This document shows positions 1,063 through 33,100 of a DNA stretch of 64,000 bases, piece after piece. The notes beneath the pieces were generated by a model, which made no database searches, was not told the DNA's origin, and worked only from the letters and a program-made list of their open reading frames with translations. The stretch spans positions 18,972,001 through 19,036,000 of the forward strand of contig NC_087251.1 in NCBI RefSeq assembly GCF_037042905.1, in the 5' to 3' direction. The DNA comes from Lytechinus pictus. Taxonomy: Eukaryota. Made by a program: the position numbers and the translations under genes. Numbering within the stretch: position 1 is the stretch's first letter; each line of letters begins with the position of its first letter.

Positions 1063-4000
1063 TCATCTCTATATGTCTCTATTTCATGAAACGTACACAG
1101 ATATGGTTATTAGATCAATGTAATTTCAGGTAACTTGTTTTTTTTTCAATCATTTTGTAAAAACCAGGGTGAGATATACACAAGTTTCAATGTTTTTTTT
1201 TTTTTCATCTGCAAGAGCAGTGCACATTTCAGCTTGCATGCAGCTTGAGCGCCGTGATGGGCGAGTGCGCCAAGCATTTTATTATGAAATACACTTTTTT
1301 TGGGAAAAATACCAAATATTTATCTCACACGGTAAAAATACTGATTTTTTTGTCAAAATACTGATTTTGGGGGATAAGAATACTGAAAATGCAAAATATG
1401 ACTTGGCAGCTCTGTGTTCTTATTGTCATCATGCCATGCCCACTCTAATAAAGTTGGGAAGAAAGAATAGTTTGCTTTTTCCATTAACTCATACTCATTG
1501 TTTTCCTTGAATAATCGAAGCATGAATAAATTCATGGGTTTTTTTTTAAATGTAATAATGAAAATAAACTTTCATCCATAAAGCATTCGGTATAGTATTT
1601 CACATACTAAGGAAACTTCTTTTGTCCGATTCCTGTTCATTATTATAAACCTTATAACCTGACTGTGTCCACTAATACAATATTAATTATTCTTCTCTGT
1701 TTATCTTTCTTTTCAGAATCATTCCAGAACCTTGCTAACATGATCTGTGAGTTCAGTTCCTTGGTAGAGCAGAGTAGATTCATCTTTGTTCCTGGCCCAG
1801 AAGACCCAGGTCCAGGAAATGTCCTACCAAGGTATTCCTTGAATGATTTTCTACTGGAAATACCCACCTCATCAGTTTCTGCACATTGAATATTACACAG
1901 AACATGCAAATAGTAAACATTCTATGCAAAACTATTTAAAATATTCTCTTTAAAATTATGTTTGAGCTTAAGGCTGTTTACAAATTTCGAATTGAATGGT
2001 TTGGTGCTCTGATGTTCCAATTTTGCGAAAGACCTAGGGGATGTTTCACAAAGATTTAAGTATTCTGACTTAAGTTGCACTTAAATGCCGACGCGTACAT
2101 GATATTCAAAGCGCGATCTTATTGATAGATACGCAGTAGTGTGCGTCCTCATGACACGATCTGACCAATGCTGTCAAGCCTTTCATACCGTACGCAACTC
2201 GGTATTTAAGTGCAACTCTTAAGATTCACAAAGATTTAAGTATGACTTAAATCTTTGTGAAACACCCCCAGGAAAACTTTCCATAAATGTTACAAGCACT
2301 GACAGGTTGTCTTTGTCTGACACTGAGAGATACCATAGTAACAGTAAGCTACCTGTGCTTAGCCAATCAAGACCAAAAACTATCAGATCTGAGAGCTTGT
2401 CAGATGAATGTTGATGAAACGCCTAACAGTTACCGTCACGGAAATCCCAGAAAGTCTAAAGCATAAATTCAAACATGATATTTGTATAAATATATTCGCA
2501 ATATTTGAGTATGATATTCTTAGATCTCAATATTTGGTGTCATTGATTTCATGCTATTTTACAGAGGCTATTTTTTGTTATTTTCTTTTACTTTACAGAC
2601 CTCCAATTCCAGAGTGCCTCACAGAAGTAATTACAAGTAAAGTTCCTACTGCAGTTTTCACTACAAACCCTTGCAGGTATGATTATTCTTTCATTCATAA
2701 GCCTTGCTTGTCATGCTTATATTTTTATAGACATTGTCGAGTTATACAAATGCTAATAATGTATATACACATGAAGATACATAGCTGAGTATGTTATTAT
2801 TTTATTTTCCCTCAGAGTACAGTATTGTACACAAGAGATGATCATCTTCAAAGAAGACATTGTCATGAAGATGTGTAGGAACTGCATCCGTTTCCCTGAC
2901 AACAATGATGAGATTCCTGATCATGTGAGTCTCACTGGAGTTTTCCATTTAATGAATTGCTCACTGATATACAAAATATTAAAATGGGATTCAAACAGAT
3001 GTCAGCACATCCTGTCATAAAAGTTACCCAAAGCATTTGCTTGGGGACTCTGTATGCCTCCACCCACTCAAAGGTCATTAAGGCCATGGTTCATCACAAT
3101 AGATTTAATAGATGGATCAGAACTAAATTTGGATCATGAATGCATATGGGAGTGAAAATTGGATCTGATTATTAAGGTTTTTGAAAATTTCTGATATATT
3201 TCAGACCTGGCAATGGCCGAAGCATGGCCCCAAGTGCTCACAGTTGAATAATCCATTTAGTTTTTAATCTAAAAGAAATTGTGTGAAGCACACTTACGAT
3301 TTTTGTAATAAGTTTGTCTTTTTCCTTTATTCTGTTTTTGCCAAGTGTACATACTAAAAAAAAATTTATTTAGGTGCTTGTGCCATTTTCTAATTAGAAA
3401 AACAAAATCTCCCTTAAATAACAAAAGTGCCTGTTTATTGTTTTGGGTTCTGTACAAAATGAATGTGATTTGTTGTGAAAAGAATAAGGACCCCCCCCCC
3501 CCCCCCCGCAAGAAAATTAACTTTCCCTGTTTTTGGCCTTGAGCCCCCGAATGTTTGCCTTAGTCTGTGTACTTTCCTCGACATTCAATTCAGATAATTA
3601 CCCTCTCTTTTCCTCATTTCTTACAGTTTGTAAAAACCATTGTATCACAGGGTCACCTGTGCCCCCTGCCCCTCCACGTCTGTCCTGTGTACTGGGCCTA
3701 TGACAATGCCCTACGGATCTACCCCCTGCCTGATGTTATTGTCTTAGGGGACAAGTATGACCCTTTCACTATCACGAGTGTCGGGACAACATGCACAAAC
3801 ACGGTAAGAATCAACACTCTAAATTTGACATAGGAAAGTGGATATGATTTTGAATTGCTTGTCCCATGTATATCCAATATGACAGATCAACATTTTAATC
3901 TTCATACTGATTATTCAATTAAAATCTATGATATACTGTAGTATCTGGAGTATTGTAATGATATTTTCAAGTAATGTTAAACATCTCCATTGTATTGAAT

Positions 4001-5199
4001 TCGGAGAACTGACCTTGTCTCTTTCATTTTCAATCTTAAAGACAAAAAATCAACATAATGAAAGTACATTCAGAGAGGATCAGTAATTCAACATTTTTTA
4101 TTTGTTCATTTTTCTTTCTTTGTTTGTGTTTCTTTCTCCTTTTCTTCATGTTATTCTTACTTGCTATCTTATATTTTGTTTTCTTTCCATCACTCTTTCT
4201 CTCTCTTTCTCATATTTCGTTTTTTCTTTCTGTTTTTTTAAAAATTTTTTTCTGCCCCCCTTTGTTTCTTTTATCATCTCTCTCTCTCTCTCTCTCTAAA
4301 GTAATTGTGCCTGTTTACACGACCTCACTTTAATTGTTTGCTTTTTTTTTTCTTTGTTGTAGGGATCATTTTCAAAGAGTGGGTACTGTTTCAAAGTCTA
4401 CTATCCCCACTCAAAGGAAATAGAAGACAGGTATGTATTACACTCATTCGTATTAGTTTTCATTTTGGGACTTTGTGGTTAGTATAGGTTCACACCGCAG
4501 TCATATGTACATGATATGTGTTTAATTACATTTGTATATTTGTATTTGTTAATTCAGACTCGAGTGTTATCTTGCACCTAGTGATATGATGCAATTTTTT
4601 TCTCTAATCTATGTTGATATTTCAGTTAAAATTTCATCCTTAACATCACTAAACCTCAAATCCTATTTTCATATCCATCCGGTTCATGGTTCATTAAAGA
4701 TAACCCCGATAGTATGAACACAACCATTTGGAGTCAGAAAGGGCAGAGATTCTGTCTAGGTATGCCTTTCCGTGACCAGACAAGGTTACTACCTAGATCC
4801 ATTACATTCCCTTGATATGTTATCCCAGCTAATTACTAAAAGCATATGGAATTTCAAATAGGCTGTATGTATTACATTTATGCCCTCTTAACATATGAAC
4901 CTTGATACCTTGGTCAGTCTGTGACTTAGTTCAGCACAATGCAGTTTGTTTAATGTAAATTCCTCCATATTATCAACACCATATACAGGGAAGTAAATTG
5001 CTTTTAAAAAATGCCATGCCAGTTGTAGTTGTCAGATAACTGCATTTAAAAAAAAAACTATATATTGTTTCATTAAATCTATACATTTTTTTGTTGTTAA
5101 AATAGAATTAAACAGCTTTGAAAATGAAATTTTATCATACCAATTAGATATCATATTTTTCTCTTTTTATACAGCAAAATTGATGAAATGCCCGCCTGA
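11..5199 (+). CDS. POLE2: DNA polymerase epsilon subunit 2 (B subunit), 5'-partial; join(11..132,533..795,1717..1831,2599..2676,2816..2924,3627..3803,4363..4430,5175..5199)
   Basis: Spliced translation gives [33 protein letters not shown] / [10 protein letters not shown] / [11 protein letters not shown] / FVFCGNF / [25 protein letters not shown] / [18 protein letters not shown] / [40 protein letters not shown] / [15 protein letters not shown]...[10 protein letters not shown], matching POLE2/Dpb2 motifs. All 7 internal introns are GT..AG with compatible phases. The first exon starts at 11 or 14 (see findings). Confidence 0.96.
937..1414. mobile_element. MITE in POLE2 intron, TIR CAGAGCTGCCAAGT, 6-bp TSD TGTTCT
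   Basis: CAGAGCTGCCAAGT at 937 and ACTTGGCAGCTCTG ending at 1414; TGTTCT at 931-936 and 1415-1420. Confidence 0.8.
2037..2269. mobile_element. Palindromic MITE, TIR GGGG(A/G)TGTTTCACAAAGATTTAAGT
   Basis: ~24-bp inverted termini and extended internal inverted similarity; TSD not clean. Confidence 0.7.
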
Positions 5200-12600: not shown

Positions 12601-15600
12601 AGAGCAGGATTCATTCAACAAATTAATCCTGCTTGATACTCATTTACCATGCTCCTGTTGAGTGTTCCATGAGTTTTTATTCAAATAAAGTTAATGTTGT
12701 TTTTCTAAGAATATCTTACTTCTGTTCTTGAGACTACACAGATTAAATGTGAGAATATCTCTTACATCATTAGCGACGGAGAACAATCAAATCATGAACT
12801 CACTCTGGCTAAATTGGAAGACGTAGCTGAAGGACCAAGGCCAAATTTGCTCTCTATGTCTGTCTTCATTGTCTCATAGTTGAATGTCTGCGGGTTGTAT
12901 TCCATTGTAACAACAGCTCCTGGGGATTGACGTGAAAAGGATGTCAAAATAAGTTTGCCTTTTATCATAAATAGGTGGCATACATAAGTTGTAACTGCCA
13001 AAGACAGTAAATACTGATATCTATTTCTGGAATCTTAATGAACTTGTTCATAGATGTTCCAGTTCTGAATTTCATGTACTATTAAACTGCAGTCATTTAG
13101 GTAAAATCGAGTATGATTTTGAAGTAATTCTGAAGATTCTTTCTTACTATTTGCAAGAAATTGAAAATCATGAAACAATTTTAGTTGTTTTTCAATTTGA
13201 ATTTAGGAACTGCATCCTAAAGATAGCAGAAGATTGTCCAAAATTAACAGTTTTGCAATAAACAATAAACTGAAATAGTTACCACTACCACACCATTGTT
13301 GTTNNNNNNNNNNNNNNNNNNNNNNNNNNNNNNNNNNNNNNNNNNNNNNNNNNNNNNNNNNNNNNNNNNNNNNNNNNNNNNNNNNNNNNNNNNNNNNNNN
13401 NNNNNNNNNNNNNNNNNNNNNNNNNNNNNNNNNNNNNNNNNNNNNNNNNNNNNNNNNNNNNNNNNNNNNNNNNNNNNNNNNNNNNNNNNNNNNNNNNNNN
13501 NNNNNNNNNNNNNNNNNNNNNNNNNNNNNNNNNNNNNNNNNNNNNNNNNNNNNNNNNNNNNNNNNNNNNNNNNNNNNNNNNNNNNNNNNNNNNNNNNNNN
13601 NNNNNNNNNNNNNNNNNNNNNNNNNNNNNNNNNNNNNNNNNNNNNNNNNNNNNNNNNNNNNNNTATCAAGAAGACCACAATACACCCCAGTTATTGCAAC
13701 AAAATATTCTTATAGTATATAACAACTTTATTGTTGAAAGTTGGATACTTAATACATAGTTTTTTCTGATAAATAGTTATTCTCATAAATGGACAAGAAA
13801 GCTGAAATAATTGCTTACCACATACTGGGCAACATCCTCCAACAGGGATAGGTGCATTCCGGCAGGTAAGGGGAGGACAGGTGCTCTTGAAGCCACAAAT
13901 CTTTGTCCTAGTCTGAAACAAGAAAATAATTTCTAATATTTACTTCTGTGCCATATGACATTGATCACATTGCATAAAGTGCAGATGTTCCACTGAGCAT
14001 CATCAAAATATATCATTAGAATAAAAAATATGTAATTTGTTTCAGAAGTCACACATTGCATAAAGAGTAATCCAGTAGTGCTTATCCAGGTTTATGCACT
14101 TTCCAGGGCAACATTATGAAAATTCAATGAATCATCATCGATCATGAGTGATGAAATACATGTATGGTTTACAAACCTGATTCGAGACTGAGTGCTATAC
14201 ATACAGAGTCAGCCTGAGCAGGAATTTGCCATACCATACACATATGCTGTTTCCTGTCTAAGTGATCTTTCTTGACATTCTAGAAGAAACTAACAAAATT
14301 CCATGATTCTTTGCTTCTTGAATAAAGAAGTTTCTATTCCATGACTTTCTAGTTATTTCCCAAGCTATTGAAACCTTTCATATTGACTTACTGGTTCAAC
14401 ATCATTCCCACAAACACAGCCAGTCAGGTCATTACACTGGGAGTTCTTCAATAGAATGGTAGGATTGTTGGACAGGGAGAACTGCTGCTGCCCAGATGGT
14501 GAACTGAGGAAGCTTGAGAATGCACTGGTAGATACAAAACTCTGAAAGAAAGAAAGAACAGAAACAGGAATAGAGATGATAAAATAGATGCACCAAGAAT
14601 TTTGTGCTACATGTATATAAAATAATACATTGTGTGTACTATTTGTGCAAATACGGCATGTAATAAAAATTAATGGTATTAATAATGATTCCAATTGATC
14701 ACAAGTGGTTTCAACCTTCAGTTGCATAATTCAACACAAGTACTCAACAAGTACCTCAGGTACACAAGAGAAACATGTGGAATGCCTCTGGCAGTCTATA
14801 GTCTCGCTCTGCTATGCAGGCGAGAAAAAAAACCCACAGACTTCTGCACAAGTCAACATCAGAAATAGCTATGAAGCTCATGAGTCATGACAACAGCTTT
14901 GTTGGAACCAAATCTCTAGAGAATACATACATAAATTCAATTATATGGAGTTAACAATAGCATGTTCCATTATCACTTTGACCTTTAAATTATGATTGTT
15001 AAGTTTTTTATCTGAATGGTCAACTTATGCAAGACCTAAAGTTTTTTTAAAGAAAAAAAAAACACTGTTAAAATATCTTCCTGAAAATTAAAATCTTGAA
15101 TATACTAACCTCCCCGGCAAGGTTGACTGTGCCTACAGTGGTACTGAGGTCTACTTCGACTGAGAATAGTTTCTCAGTCGGGAAGATGACCTGATCAAAC
15201 TGACATGGTATGCTCTCTGTATCCACTGCAACTGGACCATTAGCTCCAACCCAGTTCACTGGGTTATACCAACTCTTGGGTGTGTCAGCAATAAATGTTT
15301 GCTCTATGTAAGAAAATAAAGAGAGAATAATAGGCTATATATTATTGCACCATTCAGTGATGAGATAAAGCAAATGCATTTCCAGCCCAGCCCCCCCCCC
15401 CCCCATAAAAGGCATTACAGTACCCACATTTCTTATGAAAAGCCTTCCTTTTTTATAATAATTAGTGTTTCTTATTTGCAATAATATATACATATATATA
15501 TTTTTTTGGGGGGGGGGAGTATCAAATAATTTTGGTCCAATAAGGGGAAAAAATAGTATATACTTTCATATCTGTCAGAGATTTGAATGCATTCTCTATC

Positions 15601-18600: not shown

Positions 18601-21600
18601 TTCTTATAAACCAGCAAGCGCTTGGCACTCGCATTAGATGACTATGGTGAGATATGCATACTCTTAATGGATTCCTAAAATATATTCCTCAAAATCTCGC
18701 TGTTTGGGGTCAAAATATACGAAAACTTCAGCTCGCGCTTCGCGCTCGTATTGTTTAGCGAGACAGGTACCTATCATGATTACACAAATTTGATTATAAT
18801 GTCTCTTTTTAGGTGTGAATATAAAAAAAATTCAGCTCGCGCTTCGCGCTCGTATTATTTGATCATGAGATGCATATCCGTTTAATGACATTGTCCAGAA
18901 AATGTTTCTATTATTAGGTCAGTATAACTGGCAACTGAGCGTGCTCACTCAGTGATTCAAACATTCGGGGGGGGGGGCACTTCCATTGACGAGTGGATAC
19001 CATGCGCGACCATGGGGTCTCGAAAAGCACCCTAAACACGTATTTTCCATATTCTGAAAATGCACCCCTTAACAAGTATTGGCGTGTGAAACCGTACCCT
19101 TAACAAGTATTGGAAACAAAACGATACTCTTGACAATTTTCCCTGAAAAGAACCCCTAAACAAGTAGGGCCTAAAGTGATATGTCGCAGGTCCGTCGGTC
19201 GTCGGTTTTACCTTTACACATCATTTGGTTAAGTACGGCCCCACCTTCCACACCTCGCACAAATCGGACTCTAAACACGTAGCGTTGGGGCAAAAAGGAC
19301 ATCCTTAATAAAATATTTTAATTTTGTTTTATCATCCCCGCAAATTTTACCCTAAACACGTAGCTTTCCTAGCGAAATAGATACCCTTTTTTCACTATTT
19401 TTGTGTTTTTGACACCCTTATCACGTTACGTACGTAACGTGCCCTATCTTGAAAAAGACATCCTTTTTACGTGTTTTTTTGGTCGCGCATGGTATCCACT
19501 CGTCAATGTAAGTGGCCCCCCCCCCCCCCGGGTGGTGCCCCCCCCCCCCCCCCGGGTGGTGCCCCCTCCCCAATGCCGTGACCCACGGTACGCCACTGTG
19601 GACATATCAATGATAATTCCTTGCATATCTAAAAACATGACTGCAAAAAAAAAGCCAAAATATTTCAGTCATCCCCCCGACCCATCAACACGGATTTACG
19701 CCAGTGATGAAAACACTACCAAACAAAATTTGAATTACCAAAATCTGAAATGCAGATTTACTCAAGCAGCCCATGTATAATTTATAGGCACACCCTGCAT
19801 ATACATTGTACATGTACCTTCCAGGCTTCCAATCACCTCTATCTCTCAAAAAAGTTGGAATGCAATGAAAAATATAAAAATGTAGGATTTTACTGATCAT
19901 TGTCAACTAACATCATAACAAATGATAGAAATAAAGTTACAAAGGAAATTTTAATTGATTATTGAAAGCATGTCATATGCTACAGTTGAAAAATAACTGT
20001 GACCTACCGACTCACGGAACTTGATAGAGTCCGATGCACAAGGAACTCTCCCTTTATCCCAGTTGTTTGGGTTTCCAAAATTAACATCCTGTTGCCAAGT
20101 TTTGGTATCCCCATGGCAGACCCCTAACAGAGAGGGAAAAAATGGCATGGTTCTAAGAATATATCTTAAAGTTTACTCCTGGCCTGAAATAGAATGTGAG
20201 TTTAATAAACATTTACATGTAGGGTGATATTCTGATAAACCTAGGTTTAACCCTAGTCTAAAGTCTAAACTAGAATTTCAAACCTCCTTTCTACATGTAT
20301 GGAATGCTGGCTTCAAAATATTTCTTCCATATTCGTGGCAATTAGAACTTACCAATTAATTCATTAAAATTCATATTTTTGTATTTTCTAACTCTTCCCA
20401 TTTCATGACTCAATTAACTCTTAATTTACTTTTTGCAGCACAATAGGAATGATTTTTAATTGGTGAATGAGATAACAACTGGAACTCCACAAAAGTATAG
20501 TCGAACTTAGCCCCGGTTTAATATTAAACCACTGCTGTCAGAATACCAACCATGGAATACAATTAAAGAGGCAGAGACACAGAAATTGGAGAAAACGGTC
20601 ATCATAATTCATACATGTACATAGAGTTGCAGAGTAGAGAGGGGGTCTGATATCCAAACACTTACATGTAAATGGAATTGTCTACGGCAACAAAAATTGG
20701 ATTTGAATAAAAAAGAAAAAATCAAACACGCATATTACTGAAAATTTTATCAAATCGAATGTAGGTAAGAAAGCTACATTTGAAAATTTCGCTTTTTTTC
20801 ACAAAACAGTTAATCACTTTTCTTCATATTGTGTTTTCTTCATATTTACTCTGCAGTGCTGCAAAGTATAATGAATATGACCCCGAGTTTGAATAAATGG
20901 TATCTGAGTGGTTTTGAATTTTTCCTCACATAGAAACAAAGCATTTGGCGAACTTTTGGTGTTTTAAAAAGCACATTTGCTATAATAAAAGTGCTGATAG
21001 TTTGAAAACAAGCACATGAACTCCTATTTTTTAATGTTTGCACCTCTTCGGTATACCTTCCTCTGCAACTTTGCAAAGTTTGGTGAAAGTGACATGGGTT
21101 TTATGAAGTGCAGCATTTATTGTACTTTTCAAATTGGTTATTGAAATATCACATTTTGTAGATTGGGTTTTTCTTTCACATCATTTTTAAGAACTGACAG
21201 TACTGTTAGAGCAAACAAATAGCAATATACATGTAAATACATTCTCCATCTTAATAAGGATACAATTACATGTATTAACAATATTGCAAAATTTGATGAA
21301 ATTTTAATGGATTTTGACTGAGTAATAGAGGTTTACATCCATTTGGGTGAACTTTGAAGCTCTATAGCAAAAAATCAAGCACAAGGACCCATGTTATTGT
21401 TAAGTTTTGCATATCTGGAATATTCAGGTGCTAAAGTATCTAGATGTGCAAAGTCTAGTGAAAAATGACATGGATTTCAATTTAAATGTGAAACGTCCAT
21501 AAGTTCAGATATTCAATTTAATCACTGAATAACAAGCTTTGATATTTATTTTACTTTTGTTTACATTCTTGCTTAAGTTGTCATCCATTTCCATTTGAAT

Positions 21601-23251
21601 TTCAACCTGTTAACTGTAGAAACTTCAGCATTATGCTAGTATGATGGTGGTCCACAAGTCTGCGCACCTAACAATTTGAGTTAAGATTTAACATTAATTA
21701 CTTTTTCTTTCACAAAATCTTTCAGTTTATAATGTTCCTTATAATTATCATTATGAGTAAGTGTACCAAATATCTCATAAGAATTTGAAAGAAATATACG
21801 ATTTTCTTGGAAAAAACCTCGGGCTGTCATTTTCAGATTGAAAAAAAAAATGGTACCCCATGTCTGCGCACCCATTCACTTTGCACACGATTCAGGGATT
21901 TTGATGACAAAGGCTGCATTTTTAGGCTGTCACATGAAATGCCCAAAATTCATTATTTTTCCACCATTTTGAGTCAGATTTTTTAATGAATATCTGTCTA
22001 TGTATTGCATGTGTAAAGTCTGTGTTTGTTGCGTATCTTCTTTTACTAGAATCGCGCAGATACGCATGTGTGCAGACTTGGGGGAACTTGCCATAAGTTT
22101 TTTTTATTGAAAAAAAACTAAACTTGTTACTGCATGGTGTGGTAGTCTTGGCTCTTGTCCTTTATAAAGCAGATAAAAACATCAGTTAGTTAAATCTGGG
22201 TTTTATCACCATACATTACAATTACAAATTAATTGTCTCACATTACTTTCCCCGGTACTTTCAAAGTTCAAACAATTAATGAAATAGACCTAATCATGAT
22301 TGCAAAGTTCCCCGGGGGGCCACTTACATTGACGAGTGGATACCATGCGCGACCAAAAAAACACGTAAAAAGGATGTCTTTTTCACGATAGGGCACGTTA
22401 CGTACGTAACGTGATAAGGGTGTCAAAAACACAAAAATAATGAAAAAAGGGTATCTATTTCGCTAGGACAATTACGTGTTTAGGGTCGAATTTGCGGGGA
22501 TGATAAAACAAAATTAAAACGTTTTATAAAGGATGTCCTTTTTGCCCCAAAGAAGTGTTTAGAGTCCGATTTGCGCGAGGTGTAGAATGTGGGGTCGTAT
22601 ACTAAACCAAATGATGTGTATATAAAAGGTAAAGCCGACGACCGAAGGACCCGTAACAATAAAACATTCATGTACTTGTTTAGGGGTTCATTTCAGGGAA
22701 TATTTGCCAAGAGTATCGTTGTTTCCAATACTTGTTAAGGGTAGGGTTTCACACGCCAATACTTGTTAAGGGGTGCATTTTCAGAATATGGAAATTACGT
22801 GTTTAGGGTGCTTTTCGAGACCCCATGGTCGCGCATGGTATCCACTCGTGAATGGAAGTGGCCCCCCCGGGCAAAGTTCACGAAATTTCCATTCTTGTTC
22901 AGACATAAAAATAAAAACTGGGTATGGTACATGTAGTGCCATTGTGCCAACACATTAAACCAATGAGTTGTATCATAAAACCACTGTTTAATAGGAGTTA
23001 CACGTCAATTCCACTGCACCACCTTGACTGACTTGAGTTGTCACATAATGTAATGATCTGCATTATCTTTCTCAATCTGGTCTGGTACTGTAAAATAAAA
23101 GTCGACATGGTTGAGGACTGTCAAAACTAAGAATAAACTATTATTTCAAATCTTCATTTAACATGTTTAATTAAGATTTAAGAAATTAATCTTAATAATA
23201 CTAAGAAAGTTACATACCAAATAACAAGGTGAAAAGGACTAGGATCTTCAT
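9604..23251 (-). CDS. AMN: Protein amnionless (cubilin co-receptor), complete, 499 aa; complement(join(9604..9783,10531..10684,10912..11005,11568..11642,12027..12180,12804..12919,13819..13912,14392..14541,15110..15303,15889..16027,20008..20123,23218..23251))
   Basis: Signal peptide MKILVLFTLLFGVCHG; KTWQQDVNFGNPNNWDKGRVPC; ILLPLNGALVL; WYNPVNW...IPCQFDQVIFP; Cys-rich vWC-like CNDLTGCVCGN...CPPLTCRNAPIPVGGCCPVCGA; SEA-like region; TM GIAGIIIAVIVIICFISTMIFILM; tail with NPAF, FDNPMY, FSNPM. 12 exons with GT..AG boundaries and consistent phases sum to 1500 nt. Confidence 0.93.
11709..11805. repeat. Tandem duplication, 2 x ~49 bp
   Basis: TGCAAA(C/T)AAGAACAAGTC(A/G)TAAATGAGCAAT...TAAATCTCCCA occurs twice in AMN intron 8. 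Confidence 0.8.
13304..13663. other. Assembly gap (360 N)
   Basis: Run of N inside AMN intron 6; the flanking exon phases join without needing an extra exon. Confidence 0.99.
16395..16893 (+). mobile_element. 5'-truncated L2/CR1-group LINE 3' fragment, antisense within AMN intron 2
   Basis: Translation LQKIQNAAARIVT...SHITPILNSLHWLPIKNRIIFKILLL...APQY followed by frameshifted RSLRS and PTLWNSLP...FKNLLKT, typical of the L2 ORF2 C-terminus; ends in an (ATT)n tail. Confidence 0.88.
17745..19598. mobile_element. hAT-like non-autonomous element (middle layer), TIR CAGTGGCGTA, 8-bp TSD TGGACATA, carries ~120-bp internal tandem repeats
   Basis: TGGACATA at 17737-17744 and 19599-19606; internal ~90-bp duplication (~17902 and ~18118) and GCTCGCGCTTCGCGCTCG units at ~18390-18940. 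Confidence 0.9.
18966..19532. mobile_element. MITE (inner layer), ~40-bp TIR GGGG-CACTT(C/A)CATTGACGAGTGGATACCATGCGCGACC
   Basis: Same element as 22311-22871 in the opposite orientation; no clean TSD in this copy. Confidence 0.85.
22311..22871. mobile_element. MITE in AMN intron 1, CCCGGG termini, ~40-bp TIRs, 8-bp TSD CAAAGTTC
   Basis: CAAAGTTC at 22303-22310 and 22872-22879; internal CCCTAAACA/CCCTTAACAAGTATTGG repeats. Confidence 0.9.
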
Positions 23252-23900
23252 CGTGATGCACTTTCCAATTGATTAAACATCCACAACATTCCTGGTTTCG
23301 ATGTCGTGAGTTTCAGCGTCTTACCGTAATGTTCGTCGGTGTATATTGTACTGTTACCGTACCCGTTCCATAGAGATCCCGCTTTGGTGTTGGCTGGCGA
23401 CCGGTAGCGAGGGGGAGGTTCCCTTCGCCGTGGACCAAGGATCTAAGAACCAAGTACATCGAGATTGCAGGGATCAGCAGTGGCGGTTCCCGGTTAAGGT
23501 TCCGGGCGGCGAAATTATTTTTCCCACCGAGTTCTGGACCAACATATGAATATTCATGACTTGCGTCTTCGGATTGAGAGTACGCATGCGCGTGGACTTG
23601 GCCTCGACCAGTGCCGATCGTAAGCATTCACGTTTAGTTGCTCAGAATGAATTAGCATCGTCAAATTACCGGTACCCTTACATAGTTACATAGGCCTTAT
23701 AGGCTTAGATCTATATATACATCCAATTCTTAAACACTTATCAAACTAGCTGCCATTAATGGCAAGACATGTGCTAGGGTAGGGCTAGCTTAGGCTAGCG
23801 CATTAACTTTACCTCAAATCTGGACCTGTCTAATGCCTAATACTAATAGGAATAGCCGACTAATGCCATGGGTAACTTAGAACTTGTTAATTCTGAACTT

Positions 23901-24544
23901 TAATTGATTAGATTCCTATCCTGTTCATATTCTTTATAAGGCGCTATGAATGTCCAGTTGTTAGGTTGGAAAATAAAAAACTTTCAGCTCGCGCTTCGCG
24001 CTCGCATTCATTGTTTAGATTCTTATTCCGTTCATTATTAAGTGCTAAGAATTTCCAGTTTTTAGGTTGGAAATCAAAAACTTTCAGCTCGCGCTTCACG
24101 CTCGCATTAATTGTTTAGTTTCCTATCTTGTTCATATTCTTTTTAAAGTGCTATGAATGTCCAGTATTTAGGTTGGAAAAAAGTCAGCTCGCGCTCGCAT
24201 CTATTATTTATTTAAATTCTTATCCTGTTCATGATTTGAAAAATGTGTTACGAATGTCCAGTTTTTAGGTTGGAATATCAAAAACTATCAGCTTGCGCTT
24301 CGCGCTCACATTAATTGATTAGATTCCTATACTGTTCATATTCTTTTTAAAGTGCTATGAATGTCCAGTATTTAGGCTGGAAAATCAAAAACTTTCAGCT
24401 CGCGCTCGCATCTATTATCTAGTTAAATTCCTATTCTGTTCATGATTTGAAAAAGTGTTACAAATGTACAGTTTTTAGGTACTTCCTATCCTGTTCTTAA
24501 TTTGAAAAATCGTTACGAATGTCCAGTTTTTAGGTTGGAAAATA
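23901..24544. repeat. Tandem array of ~115-120 bp units with core CAGCTCGCGCTTCGCGCTCGC
   Basis: About 5 diverged units (GAATGTCCAGT...TAGGTTGGAAA...CAGCTCGCGCT...TTCCTATCCTGTTCAT); same family at ~18390-18940 and, inverted, at ~27320-27830. Confidence 0.85.
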
Positions 24545-24683
24545 AATATTAGCTTATTTGCCATGGTTTAATAATTATGTCTAGTCCGTATACAAAACCA
24601 GTCCTAGATCTAAAAAAAAATTATCTTAGTTCTAGTCTAGTCTCTATATCTAGACTCTGATCTACGCTGTATCAGCATGGAAC

Positions 24684-25016
24684 TACTAGTGTACCAAGGG
24701 GGGGGGGGAGACTGTCCCTCTGACGAGTCACAACTGATTCAGGGGACGTGCCCCCTTTGAGAAGCCAAATTATTAATGTAATTTGTAATGTGAAAATGCA
24801 ATGAAAAAGACGTATGTCCCCTTTTTTTAACATGAAGATCTTTTTTTTTTTTTTTTTTGCTTGTCAATTTTTTTTTCAGCTAAGAAATCCATAATTTGGG
24901 GTGAAGACCCTTTTTTTTGGGGGGGGGAGGGGGGGGGGGCTTGTCACATTTTTTCGCGGACGAAATATCCTCTAAAAAATTTGCCCCCCTTTTGGAAAAT
25001 CCTAGGTACACCAGTG
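24684..25016. mobile_element. hAT-like MITE nested in the foldback element (same family as 59413-59797)
   Basis: TACTAGTGTACC ... CCTAGGTACACCAGTG termini; CATGGAAC at 24676-24683 and 25021-25028 (4-nt filler CGTG). Confidence 0.75.
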
Positions 25017-26066
25017 CGTGCATGGAACGTATTCTAACGTCAGGCACAAATTAACGTCAGTGATCTTGATCCCCGTCTTCACCCAAAAAAAAATTGACAA
25101 GAAAAAAAAAAGATCTTCACGTTCAAAAGAGGGGACATACGTCTTTTTTCGTTGCATTTTGACATTACAAATTATTAATTTGGCTTCTCAAGGGGGGGGC
25201 ACGTCCCCTGGATCAGTTGTGACTCGTCAGGGGGGCAGTCTGCCCCCCCCCCTTTGGTACACTAGTGGTTCCATGCTGATAGCGCGTAGATCAGAGTCTA
25301 AATCTAGAGACTAGACTAGAACTAAGATATTTATTTTAGATCTAGGACTGGTTCTGTATACGGACTAGACATATTAAACCATGGTAAATAAGCTAATATT
25401 GGTCCAAACCTAATCAAACGTGAAGTTCGGAATTAACAAGTTCGAAGTTAACCATGGCATTAGTCGGCTATTCCTATTAGTATTAGGCATTAGACAGGTC
25501 CAGATTTGAGGTAAAGTTAATGCGCTAGCCTAAGCTAGCCCTACCCTAGCACATGTCTTGCCATTAATGGCAGCTAGTTTGATAAGTGTTTAAGAATTGG
25601 ATGTATATATAGATCTAAGCCTATAAGGCCTATGTAACTATGTAAGGGTACCGGTAATTTGACGATGCTAATTCATTCAGAGCAACTAAACGTGAATGCT
25701 TACGATCGGCACTGGTCGAGGCCAAGTCCACGCGCATGCGTACTCTCAATCCGAAGACGCAAGTCATGAATATTCATATGTTGGTCCAGAACTCGGTGGG
25801 AAAAATAATTTCGCTTCCGGGCGGGGGGGGGGGGGGGGTCAATGGAAGTTGACTAGGCCTACTTCATGACCTTGTCAGATGAAAATGTTGATGCTGATGG
25901 CAAAATCAAGAATCTCATAACAAAACAATCTCTCACACACATTCATGCAAATATACATACACACACACACATATTATATATACGGTATATATATATAAAA
26001 TTTCAGTGGACTTCAATACATTTTGTTGGATTATAAAAGCATGAAAGTTTCAACCTTGTTTCTCTG

Positions 26067-26099
<33 letters not shown>

Positions 26100-26257
26100 T
26101 TTCATCGGCGTAATGCGAGCGCGAAACGCGAGCTGATTTTTTTTTAAATGTATATCCTCCCCTCCTCACCTAAAAAGGGTCATTGTAATCACTGTGTGTA
26201 AACTTAATGAAGAGGATTTGTATCTCCATTATCAAAACAGCACATGAGAAACGCTTA

Positions 26258-26532
26258 TGATAATAATAACGGTATATTTACCCAGGGTAGCCACTCACGG
26301 CAGTTCCGAAAACTGTTCTCCCAGCGGACCCTGCTATTATTATTACCGATTCAGGTGCACACAGCTTTTTGAGGAATTATTTCCTGCCGGTACCCATTTA
26401 CCTCACCTGGGTTGAGTGCAGCACAGTGTGGATAAATTTCTTGCTGAAGGAAAACACGCCACGGCTAGGATTCGAACCCACGACCCTCTGTTTGAAAGGC
26501 GAGAGTCAGAACCACTAAACCACGACGCGCCC
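26258..26532 (-). mobile_element. tRNA-derived SINE
   Basis: Minus strand: A box TGGTTTAGTGG, B box GGTTCGAATCC, central ACTCAACCCAGGTGAGGTAAATGGGTACC (resembles conserved SINE core domains), (TTA)n tail. Confidence 0.88.
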
Positions 26533-26599
26533 ACGGCTTTGAACTGTTTGTAAGAATTAATGAAGATCGAGTAATTTATAAAAATGCAAACCCTCAGCT

Positions 26600-26968
26600 A
26601 TATAAAGTTATAACATTTGCATTTGAAAAGGGTATCTTTTTGTAAGGAGTGTTGGAATTCTTGAAGAGAATAGGTATATCCCTAATCAAAACTTGGCACG
26701 AATATTCTTCCCTATTGGTAAAGACATGCAAGATTCATTTTCTAAATGTGTTGGAAACTGCATTACCATGGTAATAGCATGGGACTATTAATCACCTTCA
26801 GTGGTTTTCCTTTTCTGCGACTTTATTCCAGACCTTTGCTTTTTCTCTTCATTTTGTTTGTTTTCCCTTTCTTCATGTGCGCCCCCTCTCCCCTTTTTTG
26901 TGCCCCCCCCCCCTGAAAGTGGCGCCCAGGGCACGTGCGCCTGTTGTTCCCTGCTAGATACGCCACTG
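26600..26968. mobile_element. Partial hAT-like element, same family as 59864-60727 (inverted)
   Basis: TGTTGGAAACTGCATTACCATGGTAA is the reverse complement of ~60051-60076; ends in CTAGATACGCCACTG. Left boundary approximate. Confidence 0.6.
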
Positions 26969-30117: not shown

Positions 30118-33100
30118 ATGAAATCGTCTCCCATCATGACAATGCAGCTGTCATTTTGTGTCGCGTTTGCTGCTGCTGTTGTGATCGTGTGTGTCAATCG
30201 GGTGACGGGTTACTTGCCCGTGGATGCATATGACAATGGTCATGTTGGAAAGAAAGGCAGCCCAAGATACGCAGACTATGGTCTCCTTGAAGTTGATGCC
30301 CCTCCATCAAGTTGCACAAGGGAAGCTGACTATGAAATCAGCCAAAATTATATAATAAGAACAAAAGACTCCAAACAAAATGGTGCAAACTTTGTTGCTG
30401 CCTTATCGGTGAGAACATTCGATGTGTGTTTGGAGCAGTGCTGTTTGAAAGAAAACTGTGACACAACCATTTTTGTTGGAGAAGCATACAGGAGCGAGGA
30501 AACAAACTGCTTTCTTTTTGTATGCCGACCGGATGGAAAGTATGGAGATAATCGTTGCTTGTTCACGTATCATCTGGGATATATTAGTAGTATGAAGAAA
30601 GCATTGGGAGGATTCGAAGGATATGCATCGGATCCAATTACAACAGCAATACCTGTTCAACAAATAGAGACAACAACAAAGCCAACACCACCACCTAAAC
30701 AGTTTCCACCAATTGGTAAGGGTAATTTCTTGAATATGTTTTTTTCCAATATTCCCCCTTTTAGTTTTATGCACTTATTTTAACATTCCTTTCTTTAAAT
30801 ATTCTATTTATTTTAACTTAATAAATGTTGTTAATAATGGTCCTGTTCTTAATTTATTTTTCTATTTTATGATAGATCTCTCAACACAATCGCCCCAAAT
30901 GTTAAATTAATGATGCAGCTATTTCATACAAAGGCCTAATTTCAATGCAGTTATTGATACCTGACTGATCAGAACTAGGCCTATATCTTTAAAGGTTACT
31001 TTATTTACAGGTGTAAATGTAGATTGATATACATGTGTATGCATTTGTTTAATGCATTATTTTTCTTTATAAATATTTCACATACTTTTTAGTAAATTTA
31101 GATTTCATGTCTGTCGCTATTTTTTTCTCTATTTCCAATTTTTCCATCAAACGAAATCTAAAAGTCATTCATTTTGCAGTGTTGAATAAGAATTAAAAAA
31201 AACTCTTCCCAAGTTCAAAATTATATTGATTTTTTTTTCTTGTCCTTTCCTCTGGATGATGTCAACAATAATTTGCAATTTGAGTGAAGAACACTCATGG
31301 AAATCACTGCTCTTCAATATCCCATGCAGTGTTTCTTACACTCCATTTTCATTGGGACCAGGTACATGTAACTCCAGACACAAATGTGTCCATTTTAATT
31401 ATAGTATCACATTATAAATCCTGATTCACTGGGAACCCATTATAGTACTTGGCAGGAGTTACAGCAAAAAATAAATAAATAAAAATAACAGGTAGTTTTG
31501 CAGGTGATGAATTTTATTGCCTGCAATGTAAATCATGTGCTTTGCAAGATTACCTTGTAATTAACCTGTACATGTACATTTATTTATGCAATTTAGCAGA
31601 ACCAGATTCAAACTGCCCAGAAGGTTATTTTGAGTGTGATTCTGGTCAGTGTATTAATGAACTGTACATCTGTAATTCTGTGCTGGATTGTGATGATGGT
31701 ACTGATGAATATGGCTGTAATCCACAAGAACCACCTCCAGCAGAAAAGACCAATGCTGATCAAGACATGTTTACAGAAGGTAAAAATTTGCAACAGTTTT
31801 ACGATACGTTTAATGTTTAACAGTCTGGGGCAACAGATAATGTAGACATGTTATGTTCTATGATACATGCAGTATTTTGATCATGCAACACATACAATTT
31901 ACTTTTTTTTTATAGTATGTCAGACTTCATCATTTAGGTGACAAATGAACCCTTTAATGAATTAATACCATAGAACTGGAAACTGAGGTGCAGGTACATT
32001 AAAAATAATTTGTAACACAAAGACTAATATATTTTACCCCCCTTTCATGCAGCATCACTTACATTGTATTATTACATGTAAACACTTAACATGGTGTCAC
32101 GTGCAATTTTTCATTAACTAATTTTTTCATTCATAACCTCACAGACCAGAAACTACCCCAGTCTCATCTTATCCCTCCTACTAATCCACCTAACATACCC
32201 AATAAATATTCTGCTGATGCTGAGCCTGGTCCATCTATCAAAGGAGAAGCTGATCAGACTCTGGCTGACCAGCTGAATGACCAATCACCATCAGAGAATG
32301 TTGCCAAGGGTACGAATACCATGCAAGATCCAAACCAGAGTAATCGAGAGAAGGAACTTTCTGACGTGAAGCTCAGACTGCAGGATGAAAGCAGGGGAAG
32401 ATTGCCACAAGTATTAGATAACCAAGAAGCTGATAAGGATGAGGATCAAGACCAGTTTCCCGAACTTGAGTGCCATGGTACCACATGCTTTGAAATCCAG
32501 CCAGATGGAGGAAAGACTAGGTTTGGGGGTGTTCTTGATGAAGAACAAGATGAAGAGGTAGAAAGAGAAAGGGTGGATGAAGAAGAAAATCTTAAACCCA
32601 GGCCAGAAAACCAACAAAAAAACCCTCTGGACACACACCAAAGAAATCTTGAGAGAGAAGAATACCAGACAGGGGATTTGAGAGACGACGATGAGAACTA
32701 TCAAGGTCCTCAGCGGGCAAAGTTGCTGGATTACAAGGAGGATGCTGCAAAATTCTTGTTTGACAAGAGTACAGGAGAATACAGATTGGATGAGGAAAGC
32801 AACACCAAATATGACGTCATTGGCAAAGGTGATGAAAGAGATGAGCAGAGAGATGATGAGGGAAGAGGTGGCAGATATTTAGATGACAAGCATCTGTCAG
32901 ATGTTGAAGACAGGGATGCCTCTGAGCAGAGAGTGCTGGACTATGATCCAATTGATAGGAAGATAATTAGTGATCATGATGTGGGTATGAAGCATCCAGC
33001 TGATGTCCAATCAACCAGAAATGATGCATATAGAGATGGAGACACTGACAGACAGGATAGACCTCCTCTTCGAGATGGTAACAAGAACCGGGGATTCCCA

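What the first reader, a model, noticed from the sequence alone, without database searches (positions are those of the whole stretch)
23500..25823. 2.3 kb foldback/Mutator-like element with ~700-bp composite inverted arms in the amnionless promoter
Seen: exact 9-bp TSD TTCCGGGCG. The outer ~360 bp of the two arms differ by only about one mismatch by eye, while the inner arms (~24545-24875 vs ~25085-25400) are visibly more diverged; the spacer is ~200 bp and there is no ORF. The left end is 257 bp upstream of the AMN ATG (23251). Known: 9-bp TSDs with long G..C-ended TIRs characterise MULE/Foldback elements. Inference: a recent, possibly polymorphic insertion of a probably uncatalogued family that could form a cruciform or long dsRNA hairpin and separates the AMN core promoter from upstream DNA shared with the divergent LRP11 gene.
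Basis: partly seen in the sequence, partly recalled or inferred. Interest (0 to 1): 0.72.

Follow-up and report, generated by a model that had tools for sequence, protein, structure and literature searches.

The report
Young foldback transposon upstream of amnionless
This is a real, very recent insertion of a non-coding hairpin-shaped jumping gene, one of at least 320 copies in this sea-urchin genome, sitting just upstream of the amnionless gene; it is an ordinary kind of element, notable mainly for choosing a short GC-rich palindrome (CCSGG) as its landing site.

Summary
The element spans 23509-25814 (2306 bp) and is flanked by an exact 9-bp duplication, TTCCGGGCG. Its outer arms match at 389 of 394 positions, with one mismatch in the first 363. 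The inner arms are about 87-95% alike, the loop is 209 bp, and nothing in it codes.

It is not an assembly artefact. The 32-nt terminus occurs 639 times in the genome (control 0). Nineteen measured copies sit in unrelated flanks; 8 have perfect 9-bp duplications and 5 have 8/9.

The basic family form is a 1.7-kb foldback with continuous arms of about 740 bp. The window copy belongs to a 7-member variant in which a 107-bp minisatellite splits the left arm. Its closest sibling, on another chromosome-scale contig, differs by 8 substitutions in 2301 bp, so the insertion is very young.

Insertion sites follow a strong palindromic consensus, G-Y-C-C-S-G-G-R-C, set in a local GC-rich patch.

The long arms and 9-bp duplication fit Mutator/Foldback-type elements. 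The Merlin hallmark (5'-GG ends) is not met. No transposase-bearing parent was found, so the superfamily is inferred. This is a new member of a known kind, of modest interest.

The parts
23500..23508 (.). left copy of the 9-bp target-site duplication TTCCGGGCG
   Evidence: Exact match to 25815-25823. It fits the family target core CCSGG.
23509..23914 (+). left outer arm (terminal inverted repeat), terminus GCGAAATTATTTTTCCCACC
   Evidence: 389/394 identical to the reverse complement of the right arm. The 32-nt terminus occurs 639 times in the genome, control 0.
23900..24540 (+). 107-bp minisatellite (5.6 units, then two 55-bp units) that splits the left arm
   Evidence: Tandem Repeats Finder. 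It is absent from the 1.7-kb and 4.5-kb forms. The TIR-to-array junction is found at only 7 loci in the genome.
24545..24875 (+). left inner arm
   Evidence: Inverted repeats I2-I5 and I10-I12, 86-97% complementary. It always lies next to the outer arm in the other copies examined.
24876..25084 (.). loop / spacer of the foldback (209 bp)
   Evidence: Lies between the inner arms. No coding signal.
25085..25400 (-). right inner arm
   Evidence: Partner of 24545-24875. In the predicted fold, 302 of the left inner-arm positions pair with it.
25407..25814 (-). right outer arm (terminal inverted repeat)
   Evidence: It runs on continuously into the inner arm, as in the 1.7-kb form.
25815..25823 (.). 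right copy of the 9-bp target-site duplication
23218..23251 (-). context: putative coding part of amnionless exon 1 (ATG 23251, donor G|GTATGT)
   Evidence: The reading MKILVLFTLLF-G joins in phase to an acceptor ttag|GG at about 20123, which precedes the exon that matches Amnionless profile positions 1-37. Inference only; no RNA evidence.
30118..30780 (+). context: first coding exon of the divergent LRP11-like gene (MANEC domain; the LDLa exon follows at 31542-31817)
   Evidence: Pfam PF07502 at 7.5e-16 and PF00057 at 6.1e-9.

Best explanation
A non-autonomous cut-and-paste DNA transposon of foldback shape inserted very recently into a GC-rich patch 257 bp upstream of the putative amnionless start codon. 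Shown: the element has long inverted arms and no gene. It belongs to a young family of at least about 320 copies. Copies lie in unrelated DNA and carry 9-bp duplications. Structural variants (a 1.7-kb basic foldback, a 2.3-kb form with a minisatellite, and a 4.5-kb form carrying a nested 2.85-kb insert) have each moved as whole units. Insertion sites share the palindromic consensus GYCCSGGRC. Inferred: a transposase supplied in trans binds the conserved termini, cuts the element out, and joins it to target DNA with cuts staggered by 9 bp. The two-fold symmetric target suggests a symmetric (dimeric) complex that reads CCSGG. Long arms (>100 bp) together with a 9-bp duplication point to the Mutator/Foldback group as the source of that enzyme. 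The preference for GC-rich sites would steer copies towards CpG-rich promoter-proximal DNA, as here.
For: Exact 9-bp TSD and arms matching at 389/394. The terminus occurs 322 times forward and 317 times reverse, control 0; first-look candidates numbered 1319-4831. Of 19 paired copies, 8 have perfect and 5 have 8/9 nine-bp TSDs, and the flanks are unrelated. Among 44 independent termini, C occupies -6 in 40 and G occupies -4 in 43; 23 match NNCCSGGNN exactly, against a background of 0.00043 per position. Flank GC is 0.82 in the TSD and 0.52 at 10-30 bp, and falls to near the window baseline of 0.36 (0.39) beyond about 100 bp. The sibling at C1:7445226 differs by 8 substitutions in 2301 bp. Three of the four left/right arm differences are shared with it, so they were inherited, leaving one private change. 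Only 7 loci carry the window-type junction. The 4.5-kb copies share identical internal junctions, so they were mobilised as units. No coding capacity was found. Literature: MULEs typically have TIRs >100 bp and 8-10 bp TSDs (PMC5499845). FB-like elements with 9-bp TSDs can carry a Phantom-type Mutator transposase (PMC3169594). Foldback elements have been reported in sea urchin (PMC4079207, citing Liebermann 1983).
Against: No copy with a transposase was found. None of the hits to PF10551 (17), PF20700 (114) or PF12762 (53) lies inside any terminus pair on contigs C1-C3, or near the other mapped copies. A strong sequence-specific target is not a textbook Mutator trait. Foldback shape evolves independently in several superfamilies (PMC3169594).
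Confidence: 0.62

Rival explanations
1. The family is mobilised by a transposase of a superfamily other than Mutator or Merlin, possibly one not yet linked to 9-bp duplications, and only resembles Mutator/Foldback elements in shape.
For: No Mutator-domain hit is associated with the termini. The strict CCSGG palindromic target is unusual. Foldback shape is known to be convergent; Galileo, for example, is a P-superfamily element (PMC3169594, and the list).
Against: By my own knowledge of TSD lengths, only Mutator (8-10 bp) and Merlin (8-9 bp) among described eukaryotic superfamilies regularly give 9 bp (PMC5499845, PMC8101967). The search for a parent covered only about a quarter of the genome by coordinates.
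Confidence: 0.22
2. It is a non-autonomous Merlin-superfamily element.
For: Merlin elements make 8-9 bp TSDs and can have TIRs up to 462 bp (PMC8101967). The genome holds 53 IS1595-type DDE hits, many with open frames.
Against: Merlin ends carry a conserved terminal 5'-GG (PMC8101967); this family ends in 5'-GC in every copy examined. No Merlin hit lies within or near a mapped copy.
Confidence: 0.07
3. The inner arms are a separate small foldback element that nested inside an older two-arm element, so the 'composite arm' is two families stacked.
For: The inner arms are clearly more diverged (about 87%) than the outer arms (98.7%). Nesting does occur in this family, as the 2.85-kb insert with CAGTGTT...AACACTG ends shows.
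Against: In the 1.7-kb form the inverted symmetry runs across the outer/inner boundary with no break and no duplication flanking the inner module. Wherever the neighbourhood of an inner-module hit could be checked, it lay beside an outer arm.
Confidence: 0.08
4. The structure is an assembly fold-back artefact or a local inverted duplication, not a mobile element.
For: None beyond the shape itself.
Against: The same 2.3-kb structure stands at 7 loci on different contigs with different flanks and TSDs. The terminus occurs 639 times against a control of 0.
Confidence: 0.01

Closest known systems
Foldback-type elements with modular arms (Drosophila FB; Tetris of D. virilis; TU elements of the sea urchin Strongylocentrotus purpuratus)
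   Same: Long inverted arms built of an outer domain, a tandem-repeat domain and an inner domain around a non-coding middle. TSDs are 8-9 bp. Most copies lack any gene (PMC4079207).
   Different: Here the tandem array sits in only one arm, and only in a 7-copy variant. The outer arm is unique sequence, not short repeats. Detailed TU features could not be read (papers not held); what I recall of them is from memory only.
Mutator-like elements (MULEs), including Tm1 of root-knot nematodes and Muta1 of Aedes
   Same: TIRs over 100 bp and 8-10 bp (mostly 9-bp) TSDs. Abundant non-autonomous derivatives carry unrelated internal DNA (PMC5499845, PMC3169594).
   Different: No Mutator transposase has been tied to these ends. 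Tm1 showed no target consensus (PMC3169594), whereas this family strongly prefers GYCCSGGRC.
Merlin superfamily
   Same: 8-9 bp TSDs; TIRs can reach 462 bp (PMC8101967).
   Different: The conserved terminal 5'-GG is absent here; the ends are 5'-GC.

Membership tests
Class II cut-and-paste (TIR) DNA transposon, non-autonomous | Terminal inverted repeats flanked by a target-site duplication of fixed length, at many unrelated loci | tested here: met
Class II cut-and-paste (TIR) DNA transposon, non-autonomous | No intact transposase gene inside the element | tested here: met
   No frame over 102 aa lies wholly inside the element; no Pfam hit reaches its cut-off.
Foldback-type element (structural class) | Long, internally modular inverted arms that make up most of the element, around a short non-coding middle | tested here: met
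   In the 1.7-kb form the arms are about 740 bp and the loop about 215 bp. In the window copy the arms, minisatellite and 209-bp loop account for the whole element.
Mutator superfamily (MULE) | TSD of 8-10 bp, typically 9 | tested here: met
   Thirteen of 19 pairs have perfect or 8/9 nine-bp TSDs. Criterion from PMC5499845.
Mutator superfamily (MULE) | Long TIRs (>100 bp) | tested here: met
   394-405 bp.
Mutator superfamily (MULE) | An autonomous relative with the same ends that encodes a MULE/Mutator DDE transposase | tested here: inconclusive
   PF10551 and PF20700 domains exist in the genome, but none lies within the terminus pairs of C1-C3. Other contigs and the long pairs could not be read.
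Merlin superfamily | Conserved terminal 5'-GG | tested here: not met
   Termini are 5'-GCGAAATT in all copies examined. Criterion from PMC8101967.
Merlin superfamily | An autonomous relative encoding a DDE_Tnp_IS1595 transposase | tested here: inconclusive
   Fifty-three hits in the genome, none inside or near a mapped copy.

The most novel reading that the evidence does not exclude
The family is driven by a transposase that reads a specific palindrome (CCSGG within GYCCSGGRC), which directs insertions into CpG-rich promoter-proximal islands. That enzyme may be either the Mutator-type gene found in intact 4.3-4.5-kb tandem arrays in this genome or an undescribed lineage. Either way it would be a sequence-targeted Mutator/Foldback system in a deuterostome.
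Probability: 0.12. Interest if true: 0.5.

Novelty: new member of a known kind. Interest (0 to 1): 0.27.

Why it matters
For the locus: a 2.3-kb hairpin-forming insert now lies between the likely amnionless core promoter and the DNA it shares with the divergent LRP11-like gene. If the insert is polymorphic, it is a natural test of whether such an insertion alters either gene. For the genome: the family is young, abundant (at least about 320 copies) and still structurally inventive, with minisatellite gain, nested insertion and tandem arrays. Its sharply defined GC-rich palindromic target would bias new insertions towards gene starts. None of this changes what is known about this kind of element.

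Tried and rejected
1. Search for an autonomous parent. Pfam MULE (PF10551), Mutator (PF20700) and Merlin (PF12762) scans of the genome were compared by coordinate with all terminus pairs on C1-C3 and with the copies listed. Nothing coincided.

2. Reading the long pairs.

3. Relaxed terminus search. A search that kept the first 14 nt and excluded family bases further in came out at chance level overall (52 hits against 48 control). It did reveal a sister family ending GCGAAATTATTTTTCCCACCGCAGTTCT, with 79 termini and control 0. That family is also not next to any transposase hit.

5. Second haplotype. Both flanks are single-copy apart from unrelated repeats, so no haplotig with an empty site exists in the assembly.

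6. RNA families. An Rfam scan of 22400-26800 gave only a sub-threshold chance hit.

7. Classic literature. The sea-urchin TU-element papers are not held.

8. Nested-MITE reading of the inner arms. Judged unlikely on the evidence.

Full report
**Observation.** The element occupies 23509-25814 (2306 bp). It is flanked by TTCCGGGCG at 23500-23508 and again at 25815-25823, an exact 9-bp direct repeat.
- The outer arms (23509-23902 against 25814-25421) agree at 389 of 394 positions. Only one mismatch falls in the first 363 positions.
- The inner arms (24545-24875 against 25085-25400) are 86-97% complementary in segments and about 87% overall.
- The loop is 209 bp.
It lies between the left outer and left inner arm and has no counterpart on the right.
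- No open frame wholly inside the element exceeds 102 aa, and none reaches a Pfam cut-off.

**A real mobile family, not an artefact.** The window is G000:C7:18972001-19036000 in an 812-Mb assembly. Earlier notes from this scan name the species as the sea urchin Lytechinus pictus; I did not check that.
- The 392-bp arm finds many copies at 96-100% identity, with 1319 first-look candidates.
- The 32-nt terminus, allowing up to 2 mismatches, occurs 322 times forward and 317 times reverse. The reversed control gives 0. That implies at least about 320 elements.
- I measured 19 paired copies. Eight have perfect 9-bp duplications, 5 have 8/9, and the flanks are unrelated to one another.
- The 41 terminus pairs listed on contigs C1-C3 span 1.4-12.5 kb, most of them 1.6-4.9 kb.

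**Family architecture.**
- Basic form, 1.7 kb (for example L032): a nearly complete palindrome. The inverted symmetry runs from the outer arm into the inner arm without a break or a flanking duplication. This gives arms of about 740 bp around a loop of about 215 bp.
- Window form, 2.3 kb: the basic foldback plus the minisatellite. Its arm-to-array junction exists at only 7 loci in the genome. Five of the seven were examined and have different flanks and TSDs, so this variant has itself transposed.
- Commonest long form, 4.0-4.7 kb: the same foldback with a non-coding insert of about 2.85 kb, ending CAGTGTT...AACACTG, sitting at position 340 of one outer arm. Many copies share identical junctions, so the composite has been mobilised as a unit through its outer ends.

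**Age.** The closest sibling (C1:7445226-7447542) differs from the window copy by 8 substitutions in 2301 aligned positions, plus small indels. The two also share a private base at the array junction. Three of the four differences between the window copy's left and right arms are present in the sibling too, so they were inherited. Only one arose after the copies separated. The insertion is therefore very recent. The assembly holds no second haplotype of the flanks.

**Target choice.** Forty-four independent termini give the consensus G-Y-C-C-S-G-G-R-C for the duplicated 9 bp.
- C occupies -6 in 40 of 44 and G occupies -4 in 43 of 44.
- Twenty-three match NNCCSGGNN exactly and 37 match with one core deviation. 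The background frequency of CCSGG is 0.00043 per position.
- Reading both ends of an element outward makes the matrix symmetric by construction. However, individual duplications each carry the CCSGG core, so the palindrome is real.
- Flank GC is 0.82 in the TSD and 0.52 at 10-30 bp, and falls to near the window baseline of 0.36 (0.39) beyond about 100 bp.
- At this locus the site lies in a patch of 0.49-0.60 GC with CpG observed/expected of 0.96-1.52 at 23301-23508.

**Context.**
- Amnionless lies on the minus strand. Exons at about 20000-20100, 15071-15259, 14368-14727 and 13694-13921 match successive parts of Pfam PF14828. I searched exon by exon and did not search a joined protein.
- The proposed first exon (ATG 23251, reading MKILVLFTLLF-G, donor G|GTATGT) joins in phase to an acceptor ttag|GG at about 20123. 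That yields a plausible 16-residue signal peptide ahead of the first Amnionless profile position. This is inference; there is no RNA evidence.
- The divergent gene on the plus strand starts at 30118 and has MANEC and LDLa domains, consistent with LRP11.
- The element thus takes up 2.3 kb of a 6.9-kb intergenic region, 257 bp from the putative AMN start codon.

**Mechanism.** Shown: long conserved ends, a fixed 9-bp duplication, movement of whole structural variants, and no gene. Inferred: a transposase supplied in trans binds the ends, excises the element, and joins it to target DNA cut with a 9-bp stagger. The two-fold symmetric target suggests a symmetric complex. As single-stranded RNA the element is predicted to fold at -1438 kcal/mol, against -570 for shuffles. 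In that fold 391 of 394 outer-arm positions pair across the element. The hairpin or cruciform potential is therefore real on paper but untested in vivo.

**Superfamily.**
- The literature gives TIRs over 100 bp and 8-10 bp TSDs as typical of MULEs (PMC5499845).
- FB-like elements with 9-bp TSDs can carry a Phantom-type Mutator transposase (PMC3169594). The same paper warns that foldback shape is convergent.
- Merlin also makes 8-9 bp TSDs but has a conserved terminal 5'-GG (PMC8101967). This family ends in 5'-GC, so that feature is not met.
- I could not tie any transposase to the ends. No hit to PF10551 (17 hits), PF20700 (114) or PF12762 (53) falls within a terminus pair on C1-C3 or near the other mapped copies.
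- I therefore rate Mutator/Foldback as the most likely source at about 0.6, another or unknown superfamily at about 0.2, and Merlin below 0.1.

**Comparison and novelty.** The closest described things are modular foldback elements (FB, Tetris, and the sea-urchin TU elements cited in PMC4079207) and non-autonomous MULEs. This is a new member of a known kind. The one feature a specialist might find unexpected is the sharp CCSGG target. Tm1, a comparable FB-like MULE family, showed no target consensus (PMC3169594).

**Limits.**
- The N run in the window (711 N, around 13.2-13.7 kb) was left untouched.
- No Dfam or Repbase, and no other echinoderm genome, was available.
- Copy numbers are lower bounds.

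Noticed in passing
G000:C8:21259431-21298083; C5:35936409-35968001; small contigs C109, C157, C174, C200, C214, C219, C273, C361 (outside the window): More than 100 hits to Pfam PF20700 (Mutator). Most are intact 696-aa or 723-aa open frames arranged in head-to-tail arrays with periods of about 4461 bp and about 4347 bp. Whole small contigs consist of such arrays. Whether the units carry transposon ends, and whether this enzyme mobilises the family studied here, could not be checked.
   Followed up: no
L042 (G000:C8:28092723-28102700); also C8:28093723, 28098381, 28103041: The 4.5-kb non-coding form of this family stands in a head-to-tail array of at least three units. The period is about 4660 bp and a 90-bp spacer separates units. 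The flanking 9-mers do not match, so the array arose by duplication, not transposition.
   Followed up: partly
L035:2314-5166 and equivalent positions in L039, L041, L036, L040: A non-coding insert of about 2.85 kb with inverted ends CAGTGTT...AACACTG is nested at position 340 of one outer arm. The junctions are identical in many copies. It is probably a different transposon that was then carried along with its host element.
   Followed up: partly
own genome, e.g. C1:43654583-43659263, C2:1996007-1999956, C6:9381127-9381285: A sister family whose ends read GCGAAATTATTTTTCCCACCGCAGTTCT, the same first 20 nt as the family studied here. It has 79 termini (control 0), and pairs lie 0.16-6.4 kb apart.
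   Followed up: partly
window 22650-22872: A separate young dispersed repeat of about 225 bp sits in the putative first AMN intron (98-99% identical copies, 1285 first-look candidates). It ends in ...GGCCCCCCCGGGC. At C3:18515302/18515305 a copy of the foldback family sits within 2 bp of the end of this repeat, so the repeat's end may itself serve as a landing site.
   Followed up: partly
window 26257-26535: Another dispersed repeat of about 280 bp (85-91% identical copies, 4066 first-look candidates) lies to the right of the element.
   Followed up: no
window 25824-25838, and flanks of L004, L036, L041, L039: Runs of 6-15 G or C lie next to the insertion site in 7 of 44 termini, including a 15-G run right after the TSD in the window. 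The element's inner arms also hold G runs of 10-11.
   Followed up: partly
window 26111-26149; L035:3263-3343; L047:131-662: Pieces resembling the 107-bp minisatellite unit (...CAGCTCGCGCTTCGCGCTCGCATT...) occur outside the array, in the right flank and in other loci. The unit probably derives from a dispersed repeat.
   Followed up: no
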